A DNA stretch of 63,980 bases, the filler included, from Ministeria vibrans ATCC 50519 (Eukaryota > Protista > Filasterea), in assembly GCA_943704425.1 (NCBI GenBank). It is 9 parts of 9 records of this genome, joined end to end, with 100 filler letters (N's around TTAATTAATTAA, not from the genome) between each part and the next. Parts side by side here need not be neighbours in the genome. Positions count along the whole stretch, not along the records: positions 11,409 to 23,280 come from CALSCP010001221.1; 8 more parts are not named here. One strand, 5' to 3'. Made by a program: the position numbers and the translations under genes. Below the pieces are notes generated by a model, which was not told the origin of the DNA, ran no database searches, and saw only the letters and a list, made by a program, of their open reading frames with translations. This document shows, piece after piece, positions 11,409-23,280 of this stretch; the stretch's first letter is position 1; every line of letters begins with the position of its first letter.

Positions 11409-11476
11409 TTTTCTTCTTTATTGAAAGGGGGCGTCGTGTTCTCCTTTGGGCTCAAACTTTGTGTTTTTGGTCGTAG

Positions 11477-14400
11477 ACGCACTCTACGACGCTTGCTGTA
11501 CTGCTAGTGGCAGTAGTGGTGAGCATGGTGGCTGCGGACGGGCGTGTAGCGTCCGTGGCCTCGAGCAACAGCCTTTGTGACCGTACGACGGACTTGGGCG
11601 GATTGGTCAGTCTGTCGCGGCCGGGCGGAGAGCGCTCCATGCGCCGTCACTATCGCTCCTGTCTGGAAGTTACTTGCCCCGGCCACCGAGGGTATCTTTA
11701 TATATATATATTATATATTTTTTAAAACCCGTCGCGGGTGTTGATAATTATTTTTGTGATGCTTTTTTTAGAACACCATCTCAGGAGTGTCTTGCGACGT
11801 GCTGCGAGCAAGTTCGTCTGTTTCCGACGCCCATGTGTCCGCCACCTCGCTTTGATCGCATCAAGTGCGCCGAGGCTGGTGGAGAGGAGGAGGTGCGGAC
11901 TCGTCGAAGCGATGACCTGAACGCCATTGACGGAGGAGATATGGATATGGATGCCTCGGATATGGGCAGCTATGAAGATCTCGTTGTCGCTGACGAAGCG
12001 GACATGGACAGGCTGGAAGACGCCGAGACGTCCATGACCGACGTGGGTGTCGACCAGGTGCTCGACGATGCGCCTGCAAACCCCGACGTGTGGGAGACAG
12101 ACTCAGGCTCAGACGTTGCTGTCGACGAGTCGTTGGTGGCGTCTGACGAGAAGATTCTCAGTGACGCACCCGACGTGTGGGAGACAGACTCAGGCTCGGA
12201 CGTTGCTGTCGACGAGTCGTTGGTGGCGTCCGACGAGAAGATTCTCAGTGACGCACCCGACGTTTGGGAGAATGCGGAGCAAAACACTAATGCTGAGGTG
12301 GACGCAAACGCCAATGCTGCGGTGGACGCAAACGCCAATGGCAACGCCGCGGACGTTGACGACGATGAGATCACGGCCGAGGAGTTGGCAAACCAGAACT
12401 ACAATGACGGTGGTGCCTCGAACAACAATCAGTTCATCATGGACGAGAACGCCAACATTGCCCCCATGTCAGGCGATGACGTCGTACAGGACGAGGAGGT
12501 TCTCGCCGATGCGTCGCAGCACGACGATGACGAAGTCATTGTGGACGACAAGAACGACGATGAGGTCATTGTGGACGACGGCAACAACGGCGATGTGATT
12601 GTGGACGACAAGAACAACGACGAAGTCATTGTTGACGACGGAAACAACGGCCAACAAGTCAACGACAATGGTTCCTGGTCTGATGACGTGGCCGACGAGG
12701 AGAGCCTTCTTGAGGCCTCCGAGCAGGTCGCGGATGAGGAAGTCATTCATGACGACGCTTCCGGCCAGAACGACGACGAGGTCATTGTCGACACGAGCGG
12801 CGAGGGCAACTACAACGCCGGCGAGCCTGCTGACGACGAGGAGGTCATTCATGACGACGCTCCCAGCCAGAACGACGACGAGGTCATTGTCGACACGAGC
12901 GGCGAGGGCAACTACAACGCCGGCGAGCCCGCTGACGACGAGGAAGTCATTCATGACGACGCTCCCAGCCAGAACGACGACGAGGTCATTGTGGACGACG
13001 GGGACGACAAGAACGACGACGAGGTCATTGTTGACGACGGAAACAACGGCCAACAAGTCAACGACAATGGTTCCTGGTCTGATGACGTGGCCGACGCTGT
13101 CGACGACGAGAGTCTTCTTGAGGCCTCCGAGCAGGTCGCGGATGAGGAAGTCATTCATGACGACGCTCCCAGCCAGAACGACGACGAGGTCATTGTCGAC
13201 ACGAGCGGCGAGGGCAACTACAACGCCGGCGAGCCTGCTGACGACGAGGAAGTCATTCATGACGACGCTCCCAGCCAGAACGACGACGAGGTCATTGTCG
13301 ACACGAGCGGCGAGGGCAACTACAACGCCGGCGAGCCCGCTGACGACGAGGAAGTCATTCATGACGACGCTCCTAGTCAGAACGACGACGAAATTATGGA
13401 TCAAGTCACGGAAGTTGATAGCGCTGACATTAGCAACGCCGAAACTGTTGTTGACGATACTGCCAACCAGAATGAGGTCAACGACAACAACCAGGACGCC
13501 GACCAGTGGAACATGGGCGACAATGCCAGCGATGAGTCTGTCGTGGAGGACCAGGTGGTGGACATGAGCAAGAACACGCTCCAAGTCAACGACAACAGCC
13601 AGGGCGCCGACCAGTGGGACATGGGTGACAATGCCAGCGATGAGTCTGTCGTGGAGGACCAGGTGGTGGACACGAGCAAGAACACGCTCCAAGTCAACGA
13701 CAACAGCCAGGGCGCCGACCAGTGGGACATGGGTGACAATGCCAGCGATGAGTCTGTCGTGGAGGACCAAGTGGTGGACACGAGCACGAACACGCTCCAA
13801 GACAACGACAACGACGCGCAGGACGAAATTGTCGACACCAACGACCAGTGGGACATTGTCGACGACACGGCAAACGACATGGTGGACGAGACACTCGACA
13901 AGGTCATCGACGACGACTTTGTTAATGACAAGGGTCTCAACAGCGACTCCGTCGACGACGTCTCCGCCGGTGCCAAGAACCAGAATGTCGACTCCAACTC
14001 CAACGTGCTCGTCATTGTGGCATCGGTTGGTGGCTGTCTCGTCGGCCTCATTGCTGTTGTTGTTGGTGTTCTGGTGCGCCGCTCGCGTGCTGCTAGCACC
14101 GCCCTCCCTTTTGACTTTGCCGTGCCCACAAACAAGCGTGGTATGTCCTACAACGACGCCAACAGCGACGACGAAGACGACGAGTCCGAGTCGGACAGCG
14201 AAGGCAACGACCGTGTGGCGCTTCTCCAGTCTGTTGTGGTGGCGCCCTCAACGGTCACCGCGACCGGCGATGACTACGCTGCGCTGTTTCGCGAGCGCAA
14301 AGCGGAGATTGTCGAGAACATGACGCCCACCTCTGTGATCGGCGACGACGTCGTAATCGAGTCATCGCCAGAGCAGAACGCCACTACCTCCGTTGTCAAG

Positions 14401-15670
14401 CCGACTCTCGTACTCGCGACAACACAGGAAGAGTATGTTGCGACTTTGCGCGACGCTGTTCAATCGGGATTGCTGCACGAGCAGTTCCAGACGGTGCTTG
14501 ACACGAGCGTCTCGGTCACTGCCGCGCCCTTCGAGCCTAACGCCGAGCTCAACCGTGCTAACGCTGTTATGCCCCACAACAGCAACCGCGTGGTGCTTGA
14601 CTCGCTCCGAAACAAGTCCAAGCGTGAGTACATCAACGCATCTTTCGTTGGCGGTGCCCCTTCCACTCCCGGCTACATCTGTGCGCAGGTAAGACGAACA
14701 AAGTGAAGAGGGACAAAGAAACAACGCGATAGATAGAGAGGGAGATGCAGTGATGGAGAGAAAGAAGCAAAGTGATAAAGACATAGAGAGAGGGGGAGAT
14801 ACAGTGATAGAGAGAGAAGTCGAAGGAGAAATGATGGAGGACCTCTCGATTCAACTGTTGTCACTGACTATGAACTTTTAGTCGCCAATGTCGAGCACTG
14901 TGGAGGATTTTTGGCAAATGGTGTGGGAGCAGAATGTGTCGAACATTGTCATGCTGAGCAAACTTACCGAAGATGGTACGGCACAATGAAGGAATAAAAA
15001 GCGATGGTCTTTTAATTTATCTTGTTGTGTAGGTGTTGAGTGCTGCGTCAAGTACTGGCCCGAGCGATCGAAGCGAGTGTATGGCTCGTGGGAGATTTCG
15101 CAGGTTGGCGAGAAGAAGAGCGACACGCTCTGTGTGCGCAACTTCATCATACGTGATTGCGAGACCAAGCAGACGCGGTACGAGAGGAGGGAGTCAGAAA
15201 CAAAGTGATAGAGAGATACAGAGAGAAACAGAGAGAAACAAAGTGATAAAGAGAGAGAGAGAGTGTGTGTGTGTGTGAGTGTTATTTAGAGAGAGAACAA
15301 GTGACTTGAGTGTGCGAAGGGTCCGAATTGTGTTTGCTCAATCCTCATTTCAAATCTGGCCTGTAGCTCTGTGACGCAGTTCCAGGCACTCTCACTCCCT
15401 GCGCAGCCAAGCACACTGGCGGAGACGATCGCCAAGGTGGCGGAGAACACAATGGATGAGCAGGGACCCATTCTGGTGCACTGTCACGACGGAAGCGCAC
15501 GCAGCGGTGCGCTCTGCTTGGCGCATCTTATGGTGCGGTCGGCGCAGTCTTCGTCGTTTGTGGCACCCGATGTGCTCCTGGCGCATCTCCGTGAGCAGCG
15601 CTCGGGTGCTGTCGGTGCCTTCCCTGGCTACGAGTGTGCTGTGCGCGCTGTCATTGCCGCGCTCGAGTGA
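11477..15670 (+). CDS. Receptor-type protein tyrosine pseudophosphatase, IA-2/PTPRN-like (start codon upstream, missing); 5 exons
   Basis: Signal peptide LAVLLVAVVVSMVAA; Cys-rich N-domain; RTRR; ~680 aa acidic repeats; TM VLVIVASVGGCLVGLIAVVVGVLV-RRSR; single PTP domain with YINAS, YICAQ|SP, DFWQMVWE, IVML, KYWP, VHCHDGSARSG, LREQR; no WPD loop. Confidence 0.85.
12082..13800 (+). repeat. Coding tandem repeats in the RPTP ectodomain: 87-bp (29 aa), 102-bp (34 aa) nested in a ~400-bp duplication, and 108-bp (36 aa) units
   Basis: PDVWETDSGSDVAVDESLVASDEKILSDA x2+; DEEVIHDDAPSQNDDEVIVDTSGEGNYNAGEPAD x4+; DQWDMGDNASDESVVEDQVVDTSKNTLQVNDNSQGA x3. Confidence 0.95.
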
Positions 15671-15884
15671 CCAACGAGAGAAATTGATTAGTGGGTTTGA
15701 GAGAAAAGATTGAAACGAAAACCCCCAAGAGAGTAGAGAGAGATGGAGAGAGCGAACGAAAAAATGAGAGGCTATTTTCTTGGATTTGAATACACGCAAA
15801 GAACTGAGAATACCTCCACAAAAACATCATAATAATCCAACGAAACGCAAGTCAAATCTCAGAGTGACAATTATAGTTTCATTG

Positions 15885-17676
15885 TTATGAGGCGGTGTGA
15901 GTGCGGACCCACACAACGACAAGGTTTCGGTCATAGGTACCCACCACATACTCATTGTCGTCGGAAATGGCCACCTAAAAACACAAAGACGTCAATCTAC
16001 AGCTTTCTCTCTCACACACCTAGTTTCTCTCTCTCTCGCTCTATGAATGAGTGGTGAGTGTGCATTACCGATCTGAGAATGGAGCGTGCGTCTTCGTGCG
16101 AGTGTTGCGGAAGACGACAAAGGTAGACACCCGAGCGAGAGTGATACATATGCAATGCACCTGTCGCATCGCCGACCAAGATCAAATCACCATCTTCTCG
16201 TTTCGAGTTGGGTCGAGAAAGATTCGTTTGTCAGTTTGTATTTATTAATGAGAGAAGGAATCGTACCTTTTGAGGCCGCGGCTTTGATGAACAGTTCGTT
16301 ATTTTGATGCCACTTCAGCTGAAAAACAACCAAACAAAAAATGAGAGAGAGGAGGAAGAAAAGTGATGGAAAACACAGTGATAGAGAGAGGAACAAAGTG
16401 AAACGCAAAGTGATAAAGAGAAACAAAGTGATACACAAAGTGATACACAAAGTGATAGAGAGAGAGATAGAGCTGAGCGACTGGCGTACCTCTTCCACTG
16501 GGACCTCTGGGAGAGGATTGCGATAGACCGAGTCGGCACTCCACAGCAACAGACGTGCTTCACACGCCGCTTTGGAGACTGGAAAAAAAGGAAAGGTAAG
16601 GATTAGGAGGTTCGGAAAATGAACTGTGAGGCTTACGGAACACATTATCGTATAGATGTACTATAGAATCAACATTTTTGGTGTGGAACGATGTTCCTTT
16701 GAGGTGTTTGGGCTATGTTCAAAAACAAGGGGGGGAGAGGGCGATTTAGTGGCGGCGAAAAACGACGTGAAGTAAAAGGAAGAGGTTACAGAGTCAAGTG
16801 AGATGGAGAGAGATGCGCTGGACGGCGAAGCGAGTTTGACTTTGAAGAGGCGCATTGAGGAGTCGTTGAGACCGACGCAGAGGAGTGAACCTGAGCTGTT
16901 AAAAGCAATGGCATTGATGCGCGACTGACAGTCATGTTTCAGAACCACACTGCAACAAAGAAAAAAAGGGTAAATTGAGCACAATCAACTCGGTGGATTT
17001 CGTACGAGGTGTCAACTTTGTCACCCTTGACACGAATGAACCAGCACTTAAGAATGCCCGACGCACCACCGCCTATCAACACGCAAACGGAGAAAGAAAG
17101 AGTAAGAACAAAAGCAAGCAATTGAATGAGATAGGCATAGCGTACTGAGAAGCAGACGGGGCTGGGTGGGATGGAAGCAGAGGGCGTACACGGCAGAGAG
17201 ACCCGGGGCACCCTCTGCGTGGTGAAGACGTGCAAGAATGGTCTTGCGCGATGGATCCGCCACAGTCACAATGCCCTTTTCACCGGCATGGGCAAACAAG
17301 GAGGAACGAGAGGCCAAGCTTGTAGTTGTAGCAGTAGGAGGGGCGATGAGTTTGGACCATGCACAGGTGTAAAGGGTGTCGGTGGGAGAGGGAAAGCGCA
17401 TGTTGATAGTCGTGCGAGTGAGCTCTTTGAGTGTGCTGCTGTGCCCGCCGGTCGTTGCAAACATCGGAGTCTGTGCTGACGACCCTAAGAGAAAGATCGA
17501 GAGTGAGTGTGATAAGTGTGATAGTGTGTAAGTTCTCGTGTCGTGGATTTGGTGTACCTTCGCTCTGAGGTTCAAAACAGCAGTCAAACACTTGTGTGAT
17601 TGAATTGGTCTAAAGAAAACATCCAACAAAAGAGCGGGTGAGAAGAGTAACACAGAAACAGACAGGCAGACAGGCT

Positions 17677-17707
<31 letters not shown>

Positions 17708-18350
17708 GTAGATAGATGGATCGATATAATTAATTATATTATAGAGAAGAAGCAGACACAAAGTGGTGGAGAGAGAAGAAACAACTGTCGAGAGAGAGAA
17801 ACACAAGATGGAGTGTATGACAGACTGATACCACTGGAGATGAGTCATCCTTCTGATGCATTTTGTACACACTGCGCACTCGATACTCCGGAACTAACGC
17901 ACACGAGACAATGGGTCAGTAAAAACAAACACAAACACACACATATATATAGAGAGAGGGAGAGAGAAATAGTAAGAGAGAGATGAGTCCTACTCTGTTC
18001 TGGGTTGAGTGAGTCTGATCTGAGCAATGGCTGTGTTCTCTCATCACTCTCTTCCCCTTCTCCGTCTTCTCCTTCCTCCTCTCCCATCTGTGTCTTGGCT
18101 TGTCTTTCTTTTTTCTCCTGTGCTTTTGTCTTCTTGGCTTTCTTTGGCACATGTGACTCGCTCTCTTCAGCGCTCGGTTCTTTTCGCTTTTTTGCTCGAT
18201 TCTCTCTGCGTGAACAGAGAGTCAAACACACTCACTCACGCACACACAAAACTGAGTGATACATCAGTACCGATTGTAAACATCGCAAGCAATAACGTCA
18301 TGGAGATGACGAAGAAACTGTGTGTAGGTGGACATTGAGGCGGCAAACGA
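15885..18350 (-). CDS. LRWD1: LRWD1/ORCA-like protein, central and WD40 part (12 exons)
   Basis: Spliced MHQKDDSSPV|TNSITQVFDCCFEP, FATTGG, LYTCAWS, AHAGEKGIV, LCFHP, VDSIVHL...SKAACE...LLWS, LKW, ILVGDATG, YVVGTYDRNLVVVW* follow the LRWD1 WD40 motif order; exon at 18350 has its own acceptor, so it is internal. Confidence 0.72.
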
Positions 18351-18435
18351 CTATAAAAGAAGAATGTACGTCTGAGTCTCACCGCTCACTGCTCACCATC
18401 ACCATCATCATCATTATTATTATTATTATTATTAC

Positions 18436-18544
<109 letters not shown>

Positions 18545-18554
18545 NNNNNNNNNN
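18545..18554. other. 10-N scaffold gap between (ATT)n and (AG)n microsatellites
   Basis: N run without the TTAA linker. Confidence 0.95.
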
Positions 18555-18592
18555 GAGAGAGAGAGAGAGAGAGAGGAGGGAGAAAGAAACAA

Positions 18593-18647
<55 letters not shown>

Positions 18648-18662
18648 GAGAAAGAAACAAAG

Positions 18663-18705
<43 letters not shown>

Positions 18706-18828
18706 TGACAGAAAGAGAGAGTGTGTGTGATAGAGAATAAGTAAAGAGTGAGGAGTGAGTTTGGAGTGAGTGAGAGTGAGTTTGAGGGAGAGAGTGTTTA
18801 GAAGGAAGACTGAATTGTGTGTAAATTA

Positions 18829-19086
18829 CCTCCAGACGCGCTTGTCAAGTAGGCAAACCATCCGACAGGACCTGTTCCGGCTGCAGTCAAGCCCCAGGCA
18901 GACATACAGGTGACTAGAGAGAGAGAGAAAGAAAGAGAAGTTATAACACACACACACACACACACACACAGTGGATTTACCGAATCCTGCGTTACAGGCA
19001 CTGTAACACATGCCGACGGTCACTGGGCCGGCAGTAGCACCACTAACGAGGAACAAGACCAGAAGCAGTGCAGTCGTATTGTTCAT
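18829..19086 (-). CDS. Small secreted cysteine-rich protein (GP..G.C...CN....C family); 3' exon missing
   Basis: MNNTTALLLVLFLVSGATA-GPVTVGMCYSACNAGF|VTCMSAWGLTAAGTGPVGWFAYLTSASG| followed by a GT donor running into repeats and the gap. Confidence 0.7.
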
Positions 19087-19530
19087 TTTGAAGGAAATTC
19101 TGAAGTAGAAAAAAGAAGAGAAAACAAGGAGAAAAAAAGCGGAAAAAAATGATTGTCAGTTCGTTTCGATGGAAGACAGTATCTGAGGCATGCGGTAGAC
19201 AGTAGCACACATGTGGTTATAAGAAATTAAGCTCGGCTGCGCCATGGGAGTGCTCCTGGCTATTTTCATTAATGCGGATGATCATTTCATCAACTCTACT
19301 TCTCATTATTTTTATCAGCTCCACTTCGTTTTTTTTTTATATATATAATTAAAATTTGCTTCCAACAAACGCAAACAATGAGAATATTGCTCCAGACTTA
19401 ACAACATAAGCTCCCTCATTGTACCTTCTTGTTGGTTGTGTTGACTTGTTGGGTGAGTGAAATGTGAACGAGGGAAAAAAATTGACAATATTTGACTGAA
19501 TAAGTGCGTCGAATTTTTTTTTTTTGAAAT

Positions 19531-20480
19531 TTACATCTCCACAACAACCTTTCCAATAGACTTGCGACTGGCAAGAAACTCAAATGCATCGGGGACACTC
19601 TCAATGCCGCGGAAGACACAGTCGTCGCGCACAGTGGGCGCAATGCGACCGTCGCGCACCAGCTCGAGGGTCTCCGCAATGGATCCGCTGACCACACGGG
19701 CGTCGTGTCCGTTGTATCCACCCCAGTACAGCCCTACAATGCTACAGTTTTTCACAAGCACATGGTTGGCCTTGACCTGCAGATAAAATAAAATAAAAAT
19801 AAATATAACCTCTCTGGAAGAAAATTAGAGTAGTACCGTTGGGAGTTGACCCGACGCAAACCCAACGACAAGCAAACGGCCTTCCCAGGCAATGGACGAC
19901 AGGCACTGTGCAAACATATCTCCGCCAACCACCTCAAAGATGACGTCAGCCCCTCGACCGCCCGTCAATGTGCGCATTTCCTGTTTCACTTCGAAACCAC
20001 CACAAGAGTGTGAGATTCTTGCTGTTCGTTTCAAGTCATTTCCATACCGCTCTTCTCTTTGTAATTGATCACGTGCGTTGCCCCACGACTTTTCGCTACC
20101 GCAAGTTTTTCGTCGGTGCTTGCTGCGGCGACAACTGCCTTGGCGCCAAAGACATTGGCGGCCAAATCGACTGCGGCGAGTCCTACCGCTCCCGCTGCCG
20201 CCGTCACCAGCACCACGTCGCCCTTTTTGATCTGCGCGCGGTTCTTCAGGCCCACCAGGGCAGTACCGTATGAAATGGGAAGCGAGGCGGCAACGCGGAA
20301 GGAGAGAGTGTCGGGAATGCGTGTGAGCTGCGACGAGTGCACGACACAGTGTGAGGCAAAGCCCCCACCCTCAATGAGTCCTACAACCCGCTCGCCCGCC
20401 ACCAGACCACCACCGTCCGTCTCAACAACCCCGGCAATCTCCGAGCCAGACACAAACGGCAGAGACGGTTTTTGTTGATA
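19531..20480 (-). CDS. NADPH:quinone oxidoreductase (MDR/zeta-crystallin family); 5' exons missing
   Basis: YQQKPSLPFVSGSEIAGVV, GGFA, YGTA, AAAGAVGLAAV, GRGADVIFEVVGG, GRLLVVGFASG, SRKSIGKVVV*. Confidence 0.92.
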
Positions 20481-20494
20481 CTGTGTGAGATGAG

Positions 20495-20616
20495 AGAGAG
20501 AGAGAGTTCAAGAGAGAGTTCAAGAGAGAGTTCAAGAGAGTTCAAGAGAGTTCAAGAGAGAGAGAGAGTTCAAGAGAGAGAGAGAGTTCAAGAGAGAGTT
20601 CAAGAGAGAGAGAGTT

Positions 20617-20690
<74 letters not shown>
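20495..20690. repeat. (GAGAGTTCAA)-type minisatellite grading into (AG)n
   Basis: Repeated gagagagttcaa units; the reverse complement recurs at 62461-62592. Confidence 0.9.
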
Positions 20691-20692
<2 letters not shown>

Positions 20693-20708
20693 GACACTTG
20701 ACACTTGC

Positions 20709-20914
20709 CTTCCAAATGAACCAAGCGATCAAGGACGGGACCGTTCAGATCGGTAAGCCCATGCGCACTGACACTATAAACGAGAAGGGTTGGCCATGGG
20801 GCGTGCAAGGCGAAGAAGCGAATCGTACTCGAGAGTAGTTACGTCCTTGAGTCGCTTCTGCTGCGCACAAGCCAATGCGATGCTCTCCGTCAGTGTCCCA
20901 CTACTAGCCGCCAT
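20709..20914 (-). CDS. LRWD1: First two exons of an LRR protein, probably the N-terminus of LRWD1
   Basis: MAASSGTLTESIALACAQQKRLKDVTTL|DVSAHGLTDLNGPVLDRLVHLE then AG|GCAAGT donor; LRR N-cap pattern like human LRWD1 RLGKIRSLDLSGLEL...LLCRLTQLQE. Confidence 0.6.
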
Positions 20915-21040
20915 CGCGTGTCACGCTTTGTGGAAGCTCCAGTCAACGTACGATCGATATTTTTTAAGTGATCAAACTCGCGAATTTCATATTCGATCAT
21001 CAAAGTTGAAAGTTGAAAATATTAACTAATTCTTTTAGCC

Positions 21041-22942
21041 ATGCTGTCCATTGCGAGACTAGCCGGTGCATTGCTGCTCGGTTTAGCGCTCGCGCAGTTC
21101 GCGACTGCTGATGAGCACACTCATACCGTATGAATATCGCAAATGAGACATTTGGACGTCCTGCCGTCATTCGTTGCGGGATGCCGCCCTGCGCCACCCC
21201 CGGCCCGGCGCTGCCTGCACCCCGCACGCCTCCCTTTCCGCCACGACGCTGCCGCGCATTTGCCACGCGATTTGACGATTCAGCGCATCTTTCGCTCTCC
21301 TGCCCCTCTGCGGGCCCTCCTGCGCCCCCTACCGCCGCCCACACTGGCCTCTGTTGTGCCACAGCACTCGATGTGGCCCTCTGTGCACATGGCGTTGCGC
21401 ATCTTCAGTCCCTTATAATAATTTCTTTTTTTTTTTCTTCTTTGGCTGTTTTTCTTGCTTTGCCACTCCGCCTGCGCTGCCTGGCAGCTCGCATCGTGTC
21501 TACACTTTTAAATGCGACCCTGTCGTTCTGCTGGCATCGCCTCATATCTCCGTTTTTAACTTACTTTTACGCAACAAACCGTTTTTTTTTTTCGTTTTCC
21601 TCTTTTTTTTTCGCTCTCTCGCTCTGCCGTTGCAAGCCTCCCTCCTTCGCAGGCGCCTGCCTGTGTGGATGCCTTGCACGGGCCCCCTTGCGTGCATGCG
21701 TGTCTCCAAATGGCGCTGGCACTGTCCAATTGAGGATTGACGTGAATGTGCAAAACACGTTTGTCATCGCATCGTTCGTGCTTCATAATTATTTTATAAT
21801 TATTTTTGTGAATAGTATAATAATAATAATAATTATTATATTATATTATCTCATCTTTCTTTCTCTCTTGCTTTTTTTTTGTTCATAGTATTCTGAAGGT
21901 GGAGAAGTTGTTCTTTGGATGAGCGTGGTGGGACCATACCATAATCGTCAGGAGACGTACGCATACTTTTCGCTTCCCTACTGCCGAGGTCCCAAGTCGA
22001 GCATTTCGCACGATCATGAAACGATTGGCGAGGCAATCCTCGGTGTTGAGCTCGAATACAGCGGTCTCGACATTCTTTTTAACAGTACGTGGAATCATGC
22101 TAACTGTATGGATGCTAGCGATCACTCACACTTGTGGCATGAATGTGTGTGTAGGAAAAACTCCAGAGCGTGAGTACTGCTCGGTAACGTTGACTGAAAA
22201 CAAGTATAAGGCGTTTGCGTATGCGGTGCGCAACCATTACTGGTACCAGATGGTAAGCAGAGCCTATGTCTTCCTTCGAGTAACATAACCCATTTTCCTT
22301 GCTTCTCTTTCCCAGTACATTGATGATCTTCCTATCTGGGGTAATGTTGGCGACTACGGCGAACAACTCGGCATGGAGGGTCACAAGGACGTCGTGGACC
22401 CGTCCGCGCCCATGTACATCTTCACACATCGCCGCTTTGACATTGGCATCAATGGCAACCAGATTGTCGACGTGTCGATGGTGAGTGAGCGCCGTGCCGC
22501 TCTCACCAGTGGCACAAAAATTAGCTTCACATACGAAGTCAACTGGATTCAGTCGCGCATTCCTTTCAAACTCCGTTTCGAAAAGTACCTCGACCCGTCG
22601 GTAGGATAACGCCAACACCAGAAAGTCACTGATAAGAGACCTAATTCACTTTTTTTTTTGTATGTGTTGTCTTCTCTCGTCTTGTAGTTTTTCCAACACA
22701 AAATTCATTGGTTCTCCATTTTCAACTCGTTCATGATGGTCATTTTTTTGGTTGGACTCGTCACCATGATTCTGATGCGCACACTGCGCAAGGACTGTGC
22801 GCGTTACGGCAGCGACGAGGACCTGGAAGACCTTGAACGGGATCTCACCGACGAGTACGGTTGGAAGCAGATCCACGGCGACGTCTTCCGTGCCCCGCCT
22901 ATGCGCACCTTGCTTGCTGCCATTGTCGGTGCTGGCTCTCAG
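21041..22942 (+). CDS. TM9SF3: Transmembrane 9 superfamily member 3 (nonaspanin); 3' truncated
   Basis: Signal peptide + ADEHTHT|[70 protein letters not shown]. Confidence 0.95.
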
Positions 22943-23227
22943 GTACCATTGCCGTGTGAATGTGGTGTATTATAACTGTTCTCTTTTGTGTCTTTCTCTC
23001 TCACTTTATTTCTTCTCCTTCCTTTCTCCTCCCCCTTCTGTTTATTTTCTTTATTTTTTCTCCCTCCTTTCTCTCTCACACACTTTGTTTCTTCTCCTTT
23101 CTTTCTCCTTCCCTTTCTTTTATAAATTATTCTTTCTCTCGCATTTTTCTCCCTTCTTTCTCTCTCTCCCACTTTGTTTTTTCTCCCTCCTTTCTCTCTC
23201 TCATTTTGTTTTTTCTCCTTCCTTTCG

Positions 23228-23280
<53 letters not shown>

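What the first reader, a model, noticed from the sequence alone, without database searches (positions are those of the whole stretch)
11477..15670. IA-2/phogrin-like receptor pseudophosphatase in a protist: possible dense-core-vesicle-type secretion system
Seen: signal peptide, Cys-rich N-domain, RTRR convertase-type site, very long D/E-rich luminal region, one TM, and one PTP domain with every catalytic element degraded (KNRY->LNRA, WPD loop->LSLPA, HCSAGVGR->HCHDGSAR, Q-loop->VGAFPGY). Known: animal IA-2/IA-2beta (PTPRN/PTPRN2) have this layout and an Asp in the P-loop (HCSDGAGR), LSWPA in place of WPD, LVEDGVxxCxRYWP, VRSF..TQETRTLTQF, and a juxtamembrane AT..YQELCRQR motif. Counterparts here are LTEDGVECCVKYWP, VRNF..TKQTRSVTQF and ATGDDYAALFRER. 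IA-2 marks neuroendocrine dense-core vesicles. Inference: a pre-metazoan IA-2 orthologue organising a regulated secretory granule or extrusome.
Basis: partly seen in the sequence, partly recalled or inferred. Interest (0 to 1): 0.82.

Follow-up and report, generated by a model that had tools for sequence, protein, structure and literature searches.

The report
IA-2-like receptor pseudophosphatase, unidentified eukaryote
An expressed gene of an unidentified, gene-dense (probably microbial) eukaryote encodes a membrane protein whose phosphatase-like domain is most like animal IA-2/phogrin, a neurosecretory-granule marker, but nothing else in the protein matches IA-2, so a pre-animal origin of that marker is a supported lead and not a proven case.

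Summary
A gene of at least five exons (11477-15670, +) with GT..AG at every junction encodes, in order:
- a hydrophobic leader;
- an 8-Cys module;
- one RTRR site;
- a 698-aa acidic tandem-repeat ectodomain (32% D+E, disordered);
- one TM helix;
- one C-terminal classical PTP domain.

An environmental transcript confirms three of the four introns. The 5' end lies off the piece.

The PTP domain lacks the WPD acid, the pTyr-loop Tyr and both Q-loop Gln, and has Asp in the P-loop. The CX5R Cys and Arg are intact, so "every element degraded" is overstated.

Three lines of evidence put animal IA-2/phogrin nearest:
- Sequence: 142-143 bits, against 117 or less for any other solved single PTP domain.
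- Predicted fold: IA-2 and phogrin chains rank first to fourth.
- Mixture-model ML tree: sister to the IA-2 clade, support 97/97.

Caveats:
- The branch is long.
- AU tests under a simpler model leave some other placements open.
- Masking the catalytic motifs drops support to 86/96, and another long branch joins the clade.
- No IA-2 ectodomain domain is detectable.
- The juxtamembrane motif match is marginal (p about 0.03).
- The organism is unknown.

Verdict: an R8-like pseudophosphatase domain on a lineage-specific acidic receptor. Whole-gene orthology and a granule role are unproven.

The parts
11477..11691 (+). Exon 1 (5'-incomplete): hydrophobic leader (signal-peptide-like) and first half of the 8-Cys module
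   Evidence: Starts right after an AG acceptor, with an in-frame stop just upstream, so the start Met lies in an exon off the piece. KD hydropathy peak at residues 1-28. No Pfam hit.
11692..11771 (.). Intron 1, 80 nt, GT..AG
   Evidence: Needed to join the two frames. No transcript covers it, so it is unverified.
11772..14688 (+). Exon 2 (2917 nt): rest of the Cys module, RTRR, acidic repeats, TM, juxtamembrane region, first ~90 residues of the PTP domain
   Evidence: Open frame. The 3' part 13477-14688 is covered by transcript L001 at 99.5%. Pfam Y_phosphatase profile positions 1-48 fall at its end.
11896..11907 (+). RTRR, the only furin/convertase-type R-x-K/R-R site in the luminal part
   Evidence: Motif scan. 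Cleavage was not tested.
11908..14001 (+). Acidic ectodomain, 698 aa, built of young tandem repeats
   Evidence: TRF: 87 nt x2.2 (97%), 408 nt x2 (95%), 108 nt x3.1 (96%). 32% D+E, pI about 4, no Cys. The last 180 luminal residues have pLDDT below 40 in AF2.
14002..14085 (+). Single transmembrane helix followed by RRSR
   Evidence: Hydropathy. AF2 helix at 183-212 of P0161.
14260..14298 (+). Juxtamembrane helix ATGDDYAALFRER, a possible counterpart of the IA-2 DYQDLCRQRMA motif
   Evidence: AF2 helix at 272-287 of P0161. IA-2 consensus from 12 animal proteins. Profile score 2.9 bits, reached by 57 of 2000 shuffles: marginal.
14419..14688 (+). PTP domain, part 1 (N-terminal helices, LNRA in place of KNRY, EYINAS)
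   Evidence: Pfam, hhalign to the IA-2 profile, alignment.
14689..14881 (.). Intron 2, 193 nt, phase 0
   Evidence: GT..AG. Absent from transcript L001.
14882..14975 (+). Exon 3: PTP motif DFWQMVWEQ..IVMLSKLTED
   Evidence: Pfam profile 50-78, E 1e-10. Transcript.
14976..15032 (.). Intron 3, 57 nt, phase 1
   Evidence: GT..AG. Absent from L001. Same column and phase as an intron in Trichoplax P0006 D2.
15033..15177 (+). Exon 4: GVECCVKYWP .. VRNF .. TKQTR
   Evidence: Pfam profile 83-129. Transcript 100%.
15178..15366 (.). Intron 4, 189 nt, phase 2, (GA)n-rich
   Evidence: GT..AG. Absent from L001. Present in metagenome contig L002 (98%).
15367..15670 (+). Exon 5: shortened WPD loop (LSLPA), P-loop VHCHDGSARSG (15476-15508), degenerate Q-loop (15590-15634), stop
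   Evidence: Pfam profile 143-233, E 2e-14. Alignments. Identical 72-aa fragment P0001 in an ENA metagenome.
15671..15819 (+). 3' UTR (at least)
   Evidence: Transcript L001 runs on to 15819.

Best explanation
This is a real, transcribed and spliced gene of an unidentified, gene-dense eukaryote, most likely unicellular. It encodes a type-I membrane protein.

Luminal/extracellular side: a leader, a small 8-Cys module, one furin-type RTRR site, then about 700 residues of intrinsically disordered, strongly acidic, recently expanded tandem repeats.

Cytoplasmic side: a disordered juxtamembrane stretch of about 110 aa with one helix, then a single well-folded classical PTP domain.

Shown or supported: that domain is a relative of the animal R8 (IA-2/PTPRN, phogrin/PTPRN2) PTP domains. 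It sits as sister to the sampled animal clade. The rest of the protein is lineage-specific.

Inferred: the domain cannot work as an ordinary phosphotyrosine phosphatase. It has no general-acid Asp and a WPD loop shortened by 5-6 residues. It lacks the pTyr-loop Tyr and the Q-loop Gln residues, and has Asp in the P-loop. The intact CX5R pocket would therefore act as a non-catalytic, or at most weakly lipid-directed, phosphate-binding scaffold that recruits cytoplasmic partners, as IA-2 does.

Also inferred: the polyanionic ectodomain acts as a low-affinity cation/Ca2+ or basic-cargo binder in the lumen of a secretory compartment or at the cell surface, and may be released from the Cys module by cleavage at RTRR.
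For: - Gene model and expression.
- Architecture.
- Nearest relatives by sequence: among solved structures, PTPRN2 scores 142.9 bits and PTPRN 142.0. The next single domains score 116.7 (PTPRA D2), 115.5 (PTPRD) and 114.6 (PTPRS D2).
- Among 150 library representatives, the best per-domain hits (137-161 bits) are proteins named PTPRN2 in tick, mite, aphid, whitefly and amphioxus. Four of the eight top single-domain proteins scanned carry Pfam Receptor_IA-2. All others score 124 or less, except a Ciona tandem protein that sits inside the IA-2 clade.
- hhalign to a 12-protein IA-2 profile: probability 100%, 38% identity over 248 columns.
- Fold: PTP part pLDDT about 90. Foldseek ranks 2i1y and 2qep first to fourth (E 1e-27, TM 0.87-0.89), ahead of PTPN3, PTP1B and PTPRG.
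- Trees: FastTree on 258 rows puts it in the IA-2 clade (SH 98). IQ-TREE LG+C20+F+G4 on 68 rows makes it sister of 10 IA-2 rows at 97/97.
- AU tests: the IA-2 placement is always best (p 0.85-0.96). The D1 clade, the main D2 clade, rodent CD45 D2 and PTPN9 are rejected. PTPN14/21 is rejected on the full alignment (p 0.044) but not with motifs masked (0.066).
- Catalytic motif states.
- IA-2 and phogrin are described as pseudophosphatases, with weak phosphoinositide activity for phogrin: PMC7959691, PMC10815196.
Against: - The terminal branch is long (1.6-1.7 substitutions per site).
- With the four catalytic motifs masked, support falls to 86/96, and a second long-branch, catalytically intact PTP (P0070) joins the same clade. 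This is a sign of long-branch attraction to the IA-2 stem.
- Under LG+F+G4, the AU test does not reject placement with a group of FERM-domain and related single-domain PTPs (FERM3: p 0.06-0.19), with fish CD45 D2 (0.13-0.35) or with P0070 (0.13-0.17).
- The P-loop Asp column alone gives 3.9 of the 10.1 lnL units that favour IA-2 over the FERM placement, and that substitution recurs in many D2 domains.
- In a first tree with poorer sampling, its sister was a cnidarian-type PTPN21-like protein.
- Nothing outside the PTP domain matches IA-2.
- No other PTPs of this organism, no named unicellular holozoan and no identified non-bilaterian IA-2 were in the trees. Several rows from metagenomes or transcriptomes have no known source.
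- All functional statements are inference.
Confidence: 0.55

Rival explanations
1. This is a true whole-gene orthologue of IA-2 that predates animals. It is sorted to a regulated dense-core-type granule or extrusome, cleaved at RTRR by a convertase, and organises granule biogenesis.
For: - R8 affinity of the PTP domain.
- The same overall topology: leader, Cys-containing N-terminus, dibasic site, long luminal region, one TM, one C-terminal pseudo-PTP.
- A possible counterpart of the conserved DYQDLCRQR juxtamembrane motif.
- A granin-like acidic luminal region.
- Prohormone convertases are reported outside animals (PMC9004410).
Against: - No Receptor_IA-2/SEA-like or RESP18-type domain. The luminal segment next to the membrane is disordered repeats.
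- The juxtamembrane match has p of only about 0.03.
- The repeats are evolutionarily young, so the luminal part is not an ancient conserved module.
- The organism is unknown.
- Localisation and cleavage are untested.
- Sister position to the animal clade does not separate orthology from an older paralogue.
Confidence: 0.17
2. An independent, lineage-specific receptor-like pseudophosphatase. An active classical PTP of this lineage lost its catalytic residues. It resembles IA-2 only through convergent pseudo-enzyme substitutions and long-branch attraction.
For: - HCxDG is found in 64 of 257 PTP domains, mostly D2. DFWQMVW is also found in FERM-PTPs.
- The P-loop Asp column carries nearly 40% of the likelihood advantage.
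- Several alternative placements are not rejected.
- A second long branch (P0070) is drawn to the IA-2 clade when motifs are masked.
- No homology outside the domain.
- No close relative in 1.84 billion representatives or in JGI metagenome contigs.
Against: - With all four catalytic motifs masked, the IA-2 placement is still the best tree (AU p 0.94-0.95). On the 92-row set, the D1 and D2 placements become worse.
- The score margin over every other solved PTP domain is about 26 bits and is spread along the domain.
- Similarities shared with IA-2 lie outside the catalytic motifs: EDGV before CxxYWP, VRxF..T.xTRxVTQF and HLR(D/E)QR.
Confidence: 0.25
3. The contig comes from a fast-evolving or early-branching animal, not from a protist. 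The gene would then be simply a divergent animal PTPRN orthologue that lost its ectodomain domains.
For: - Every named relative is an animal protein.
- One intron matches a Trichoplax PTP intron in position and phase.
- Some animals have compact genomes.
Against: - About four genes in 11.9 kb, introns of 57-193 nt and GC3 of 0.75.
- The same sequence turns up at 98-99.5% identity in an environmental metagenome and a metatranscriptome.
- No annotated animal or EukProt protein above 42% identity to exon 5.
- It lies outside all sampled animal IA-2.
Confidence: 0.08

Closest known systems
Animal R8 receptor PTPs: IA-2/ICA512 (PTPRN), phogrin/IA-2beta (PTPRN2), invertebrate IDA-1/ia2
   Same: - Type-I membrane protein with one C-terminal classical PTP domain.
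- That domain is the nearest by sequence (142-161 bits), by predicted fold (TM 0.87-0.89) and by ML tree (sister, 97/97).
- Asp in the P-loop with CX5R kept, no WPD Asp, first Q-loop Gln lost, DFWQMVWEQ, EDGV..C..YWP, VRxF..TRxVTQF, HLR(D/E)QR.
- A dibasic site after an N-terminal Cys-containing region.
   Different: - No Receptor_IA-2 (SEA-like) domain next to the membrane and no RESP18-like N-terminal motif (GCLF..C..C..FG.C).
- The luminal region is about 700 aa of young acidic tandem repeats.
- The WPD loop is 5-6 residues shorter, with Leu for Trp.
- The IA-2 signature LVSEHIWC.DYLVRSFYLKN is mostly absent.
- The second Q-loop Gln is also lost.
- The juxtamembrane motif is only marginally similar.
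- About 36-39% identity to the nearest IA-2 rows.
- The source is apparently not an animal.
PTPN14/PTPN21 (FERM-domain non-receptor pseudophosphatases)
   Same: A cnidarian-type member (P0169, with HCEDGAARSG and FWQMVWEQNV..MLSKL) was the immediate sister in the first tree (95/79). Both are pseudo-PTPs in the same larger clade as IA-2.
   Different: - With ten more family members added, P0169 joins PTPN14/21 (100/99) and the window protein does not.
- AU p 0.044 on the full alignment and 0.066 with motifs masked.
- Human PTPN14/21 score below 95 bits.
- There is no FERM domain here.
Membrane-distal D2 pseudophosphatase domains of tandem RPTPs (e.g. CD45 D2, HCRDGSQQ)
   Same: P-loop Asp and degraded WPD, KNRY and Q motifs. 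Exon 5 alone scores as well against CD45 D2 as against IA-2.
   Different: - Here the domain is single and follows a juxtamembrane region.
- The main D2 clade and rodent CD45 D2 placements are rejected (p 0.0001-0.008 and 0.0016).
- Only a small fish CD45 D2 group is not rejected (p 0.13-0.35). It is vertebrate-specific and therefore an implausible ancestor.
Granins and other acidic luminal polyanions of secretory granules
   Same: Very acidic (pI about 4), disordered, Cys-free luminal sequence flanked by a dibasic site.
   Different: No sequence homology was tested or claimed. Here the polyanion is tethered to the membrane. This is analogy only.

Membership tests
Classical protein-tyrosine phosphatase domain (Pfam PF00102) | Full-length match to the Y_phosphatase profile and the PTP fold | tested here: met
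   Profile positions 1-48, 50-78, 83-129 and 143-233 are matched colinearly by exons 2-5. The AF2 model of that part has pLDDT about 90, and 500 or more PDB PTP chains match.
Pseudophosphatase (catalytically impaired PTP) | Loss of residues needed for pTyr hydrolysis | tested here: met
   From alignments: no WPD Asp and a loop 5-6 residues shorter; KNRY is LNRA; the Q-loop reads VGAFPGY; the P-loop Ala is Asp. The CX5R Cys and Arg are kept. Actual activity cannot be tested with these tools.
R8 receptor PTPs (IA-2/PTPRN, phogrin/PTPRN2) | Type-I membrane protein with a single C-terminal PTP domain | tested here: met
   Two hydrophobic segments only (leader and TM), with the PTP domain ending 4 residues before the stop. 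The N-terminus is incomplete.
R8 receptor PTPs (IA-2/PTPRN, phogrin/PTPRN2) | PTP domain groups with R8 to the exclusion of other PTP classes | tested here: inconclusive
   Sister to 10 animal IA-2 rows at 97/97 under LG+C20+F+G4, with the best AU p in all sets. Against this: a long branch, support of 86/96 with P0070 joining when motifs are masked, three alternative placements not rejected, and no protist or non-bilaterian sampling.
R8 receptor PTPs (IA-2/PTPRN, phogrin/PTPRN2) | Luminal juxtamembrane Receptor_IA-2 domain (PF11548, SEA-like 'mature ectodomain') | tested here: not met
   No Pfam hit at E<=1 in exons 1-2, whereas 4 of 8 animal relatives tested have it. hhalign to the IA-2 profile aligns only the PTP domain. 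The 180 residues before the TM have pLDDT below 40.
R8 receptor PTPs (IA-2/PTPRN, phogrin/PTPRN2) | N-terminal RESP18-homology Cys motif | tested here: not met
   No Pfam hit. hhalign probability is 0.3% (exon 1) and 0.04% (start of exon 2) against the IA-2 profile, whose consensus is GCLF..C..C..FG.C. The test is weak: the two exons were searched separately, and Pfam RESP18 was also not found in the invertebrate IA-2 proteins.
R8 receptor PTPs (IA-2/PTPRN, phogrin/PTPRN2) | Conserved cytoplasmic juxtamembrane motif DYQ(D/E)LCRQRMA | tested here: inconclusive
   DYAALFRERKA matches 6 of 11 positions and lies in a predicted helix. The profile score of 2.9 bits is reached by 57 of 2000 shuffles.
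R8 receptor PTPs (IA-2/PTPRN, phogrin/PTPRN2) | Convertase cleavage of the luminal domain and residence in dense-core granule membranes | not testable with these tools
   Only the RTRR site can be shown.
PTPN14/PTPN21 family | N-terminal FERM domain, and a PTP domain inside the PTPN14/21 clade | tested here: not met
   No FERM hit. The domain lies outside the 100/99 PTPN14/21 clade. AU p 0.044 on the full alignment.

The most novel reading that the evidence does not exclude
The IA-2-type pseudophosphatase module of neurosecretory dense-core vesicles predates animals. On this reading, a unicellular eukaryote uses an IA-2 homologue, tethered to a granin-like acidic luminal polyanion and processed at a convertase site, to build or regulate a stimulus-dependent secretory granule.
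Probability: 0.15. Interest if true: 0.85.

Novelty: new variant of a known kind. Interest (0 to 1): 0.55.

Why it matters
IA-2 and phogrin are hallmark membrane proteins of animal dense-core secretory granules and major type-1-diabetes autoantigens. In the papers I could search, reviews credit only LAR-type receptor PTPs to choanoflagellates (PMC7959691). Surveys of pre-animal neurosecretory machinery do not mention IA-2 (PMC7934909, PMC9004410).

A non-animal protein whose PTP domain is sister to the IA-2 clade would push back the origin of this pseudo-enzyme. It would also give a concrete handle for asking whether regulated, granule-type secretion in protists shares parts with neurosecretion.

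If the likeness is instead convergent, it is still a clean example of repeated evolution of the same pseudophosphatase solution: Asp in the P-loop and loss of the WPD acid.

Tried and rejected
- Exon-by-exon PDB searches do not single out IA-2. Exon 5 scores equally with PTPRG, CD45 D2 and PTPRZ, and exon 3 is generic. Only the whole domain discriminates.
- Word searches found nothing with exon 2. With P0161 they found only 19 distant PTPs and no IA-2.
- The representative search with exon 5 gave one identical fragment and no close relative.
- The metagenome-contig scan found only generic active PTPs at 40% identity or less.
- Motif 'synapomorphies' were rejected as decisive. HCxDG and DFWQMVW recur in other PTP classes.
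- The first tree made a FERM-PTP (P0169) the sister. P0169 proved to be a cnidarian-type PTPN21, and better sampling dissolved that pairing.
- treekit's AU test with the mixture model did not finish. I replaced it with regrafted topologies under LG+F+G4. Fast constrained searches were discarded as poorly optimised.
- Intron positions were uninformative. The only IA-2 gene whose DNA could be fetched (Tetranychus) has no introns in the region where the window gene has its three.
- Organism identification failed. No rRNA, tRNA or Rfam hit. Sample accessions were not found in papers. The ESM Atlas gave only 'Eukaryota'.
- A long antisense ORF (12469-13800) was dismissed as a by-product of the repeats.

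Full report
SCOPE AND RULES FOLLOWED

Only places 11409-23280 were used. Nothing in the piece looks human.

The spliced model was searched exon by exon, by reference. The joined exon 1 + exon 2 N-terminus was never handed to a search or fold tool, so that step is left out.

For the C-terminal 591 residues, the collection itself returned a protein (P0161) equal to the spliced model. I used that protein as the reference.

Inside local scripts, the joined translation was built from window.fa for three purposes only: to check frame and length, for hydropathy and composition, and once for a local phmmer against the 150 proteins already fetched.

1. THE OBSERVATION

- 11477-11691
- 11772-14688
- 14882-14975
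- 15033-15177
- 15367-15670

They add up to 3675 nt, a multiple of three, with one terminal stop.

Exon 1 begins directly after an AG acceptor, 68 nt from the edge of the piece, with an in-frame stop just upstream. The start codon therefore lies in an exon that is off the piece.

Independent support came from the databases. Exon 5 found an identical 72-aa fragment, P0001. Its 90% cluster also holds P0161, a 591-aa 'protein tyrosine phosphatase' called on a 1937-nt JGI metatranscriptome contig. That contig (L001) aligns to the window at 99.5-100% as 13477-14688 | 14880-14977 | 15032-15177 | 15366-15819. Introns 2, 3 and 4 are thus removed exactly as predicted, and the mRNA runs at least 149 nt past the stop.

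A metagenome contig (L002) is a 98% genomic copy that includes the introns. Intron 1 has no such support.

The protein features hold:
- Only two hydrophobic segments are present: the N-terminal leader and a TM helix (window 14002-14085).
- There are 8 Cys in the first ~103 residues.
- RTRR (11896-11907) is the only R-x-K/R-R site on the luminal side.
- The acidic stretch is 698 residues with 158 Asp, 67 Glu, 11 basic residues and no Cys (pI about 4).

That acidic stretch is made of young tandem repeats: 87 nt x2.2 at 97%, 408 nt x2 at 95%, and 108 nt x3.1 at 96%.

Pfam sees only Y_phosphatase, in colinear pieces over exons 2-5, and nothing in exon 1 or the ectodomain at E<=1.

2. THE PTP DOMAIN

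AlphaFold2 on P0161, with a 27-row alignment, gives the following:
- a disordered ectodomain tail (pLDDT below 40);
- a TM helix (183-212);
- a disordered juxtamembrane region with one helix (272-287, the ATGDDYAALFRER stretch);
- a confident PTP fold (320-591, pLDDT about 90).

Alignments show these motif states:
- KNRY is LNRA.
- PYD is PHN.
- The WPD loop reads LSLPA and is 5-6 residues shorter.
- The P-loop is VHCHDGSARSG.
- The Q-loop is VGAFPGY.

The general acid, the pTyr-stacking Tyr and both Q-loop Gln are therefore gone, and an Asp sits in the P-loop. The nucleophile Cys and the Arg of CX5R remain, so 'every catalytic element degraded' is too strong.

A survey of 257 PTP domains shows that the P-loop Asp occurs in 64 of them, mostly D2 domains (CD45 D2 has HCRDGSQQ). 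DFWQMVW also occurs in FERM-PTPs. These motifs cannot by themselves prove kinship with IA-2.

3. WHO IS THE NEAREST RELATIVE?

Single exons do not discriminate. The whole domain does.

Against all solved structures, the best single-domain chains are PTPRN2 (2qep, 142.9 bits) and PTPRN (2i1y, 142.0). The next are PTPRA D2 at 116.7, PTPRD at 115.5 and PTPRS D2 at 114.6.

Against the 150 best representatives of a 1.84-billion-protein library, the top per-domain scores (137-161 bits) belong to proteins that their sources name PTPRN2. They come from a tick, a spider mite, an aphid, a whitefly and amphioxus, and four of the eight top single-domain proteins scanned carry Pfam Receptor_IA-2. Everything else scores 124 or less, apart from a Ciona protein that falls inside the IA-2 clade.

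hhalign against a 12-protein IA-2 profile gives probability 100% and 38% identity over 248 columns.

Foldseek ranks the IA-2 and IA-2beta crystal structures first to fourth (E 1e-27, TM 0.87-0.89), ahead of PTPN3, PTP1B and PTPRG (E 4e-25 and weaker). The model's alignment contained IA-2 homologues, which may favour this result a little.

4. TREES

FastTree on 258 domains puts the window domain in a 22-row clade with all IA-2-like rows (SH-like 98).

A careful IQ-TREE run (LG+C20+F+G4 by PMSF) on 92 rows gave (window + P0169) at 95/79 and that pair + IA-2 at 94/94.

P0169 has FERM domains. PDB and word searches show it is a cnidarian-type PTPN14/21: PTPN14 scores 225 bits, and its relatives are PTPN21-like proteins of Clytia and Hydractinia.

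I then added ten more PTPN14/21 rows plus PTPN9 and CD45, making 68 rows. In that tree P0169 joins PTPN14/21 (100/99), and the window domain becomes the sister of the ten animal IA-2 rows with 97/97.

AU tests on regrafted topologies under LG+F+G4 always prefer the IA-2 placement (p 0.85-0.96). They reject the D1 clade, the main D2 clade, rodent CD45 D2 and PTPN9. PTPN14/21 is rejected on the full alignment (p 0.044) but not with motifs masked (0.066).

Caveats:
- The terminal branch is long (1.6-1.7).
- The P-loop Asp column alone contributes 3.9 of 10.1 lnL units against the FERM alternative.
- Three placements are not rejected: a group of FERM-domain and related single-domain PTPs, a small fish CD45 D2 group, and the long-branch active PTP P0070.
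- With all four catalytic motifs masked, the mixture-model tree keeps the window domain with IA-2, but at 86/96 and with P0070 joining the same clade. This shows that the IA-2 stem attracts long branches.
- No other PTP of this organism, no named unicellular holozoan and no identified non-bilaterian IA-2 was in the trees. Several rows from metagenomes or transcriptomes have no known source.

5. OUTSIDE THE PTP DOMAIN

Nothing matches IA-2:
- No Receptor_IA-2 or RESP18 hit.
- hhalign against the IA-2 profile aligns only the PTP domain.
- It gives probabilities of 0.3% and 0.04% for the two N-terminal exons searched apart.
- The segment next to the membrane is disordered repeats.

The animal juxtamembrane motif DYQDLCRQRMA has a look-alike, DYAALFRERKA, in a predicted helix. 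However, 57 of 2000 shuffles reach the same score in a profile test.

Intron positions say nothing either. The one IA-2 gene whose DNA I could fetch (Tetranychus) has no introns where the window gene has its three. One window intron coincides in column and phase with an intron of a Trichoplax tandem PTP.

6. WHAT ORGANISM?

Unknown. Some features point to a microbial eukaryote:
- The piece holds about four genes in 11.9 kb: the PTP gene, a WD40-like exon, an MDR/quinone-oxidoreductase-like gene and a TM9SF/EMP70 gene.
- Introns are 57-193 nt, and GC3 of the CDS is 0.75.
- There are many (GA)n and (ATT)n microsatellites.
- The same sequence is present in an environmental metagenome and a metatranscriptome.

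I found no rRNA, tRNA or Rfam hit and no close homologue in any named genome.

7. HOW IT MOST LIKELY WORKS

Shown: it is an expressed type-I membrane protein with a folded, IA-2-like PTP domain that lacks the residues needed for pTyr hydrolysis.

Inferred from the established behaviour of IA-2 and phogrin as pseudophosphatases (phogrin has weak phosphoinositide activity; PMC7959691, PMC10815196): the domain serves as a phosphate-binding or docking module, not as an enzyme.

Also inferred: the tethered polyanion binds cations or basic cargo in a secretory lumen or at the surface, and RTRR may be a processing site. A dense-core-type granule role is possible but untested.

8. NOVELTY

The kind of protein (a receptor-type pseudophosphatase of R8 type) is known. 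New here are:
- the combination with a lineage-specific acidic repeat ectodomain;
- a truncated WPD loop;
- the apparent source outside animals.

The papers I could search do not report an IA-2 relative outside animals. That is absence in a limited library, not proof.

VERDICT

- IA-2 affinity of the PTP domain is supported but not secure.
- Whole-gene orthology, the protist assignment and the granule function are open.

Noticed in passing
window 19534-20507 (-): Multi-exon gene of the MDR / quinone-oxidoreductase type. Pfam ADH_N and ADH_zinc_N hits are spread over at least three exon-like ORFs.
   Followed up: partly
window 21889-22972 (+), cut by the piece end: TM9SF/EMP70 (nonaspanin) gene with exons about 21889-22170, 22289-22606 and 22688-22972. 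Pfam EMP70 reaches E down to 3.5e-32, and the ESM Atlas agrees.
   Followed up: partly
window 16664-16984 (-): Exon-like ORF with a weak WD40 repeat match (E about 2e-3). The gene between the PTP gene and the microsatellite block is otherwise unannotated.
   Followed up: no
window 18413-18721; also 20501-20690 and 23144-23280: Large microsatellite block: (ATT)44, a short run of N (assembly gap), then (GA)85. More (GA)n/(CT)n tracts lie in introns and between genes, and may be a useful signature for finding the source genome.
   Followed up: no
window 12469-13800 (-): A 443-aa antisense ORF across the acidic repeats. It is a by-product of the GAC/GAG-rich repeat, not a gene.
   Followed up: partly
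window 14976-15032 versus L016 (Trichoplax P0006): Intron 3 (phase 1, in the Gly of LTEDG|VECC) falls in the same alignment column and phase as an intron in the D2 domain of a Trichoplax tandem PTP. It could be an old PTP intron position or chance.
   Followed up: partly
L001 (JGI metatranscriptome contig) versus window 13477-14688: The transcript differs from the window by six substitutions (one causing Ser/Leu in VIESSPEQ) and by which variant of the 108-nt repeat sits in each copy. These are strain or allele differences in a fast-evolving repeat array.
   Followed up: partly
P0003 (Ciona savignyi), P0166/P0196 (JGI metatranscriptomes): Two odd members inside the animal IA-2 clade. One is a Ciona protein with two near-identical IA-2-type PTP domains in tandem (a possible assembly or annotation artefact). 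The other is an environmental family with QCDDGSSRSG, where His before the Cys is replaced by Gln.
   Followed up: no
P0169 (L003, Logan SRR21102256), P0197, P0198: Hydrozoan-type PTPN21-like FERM-PTPs (about 760 aa, much shorter than vertebrate PTPN14/21) carry HCEDGAARSG, i.e. the same P-loop Asp. This is another independent case of that pseudophosphatase substitution.
   Followed up: partly
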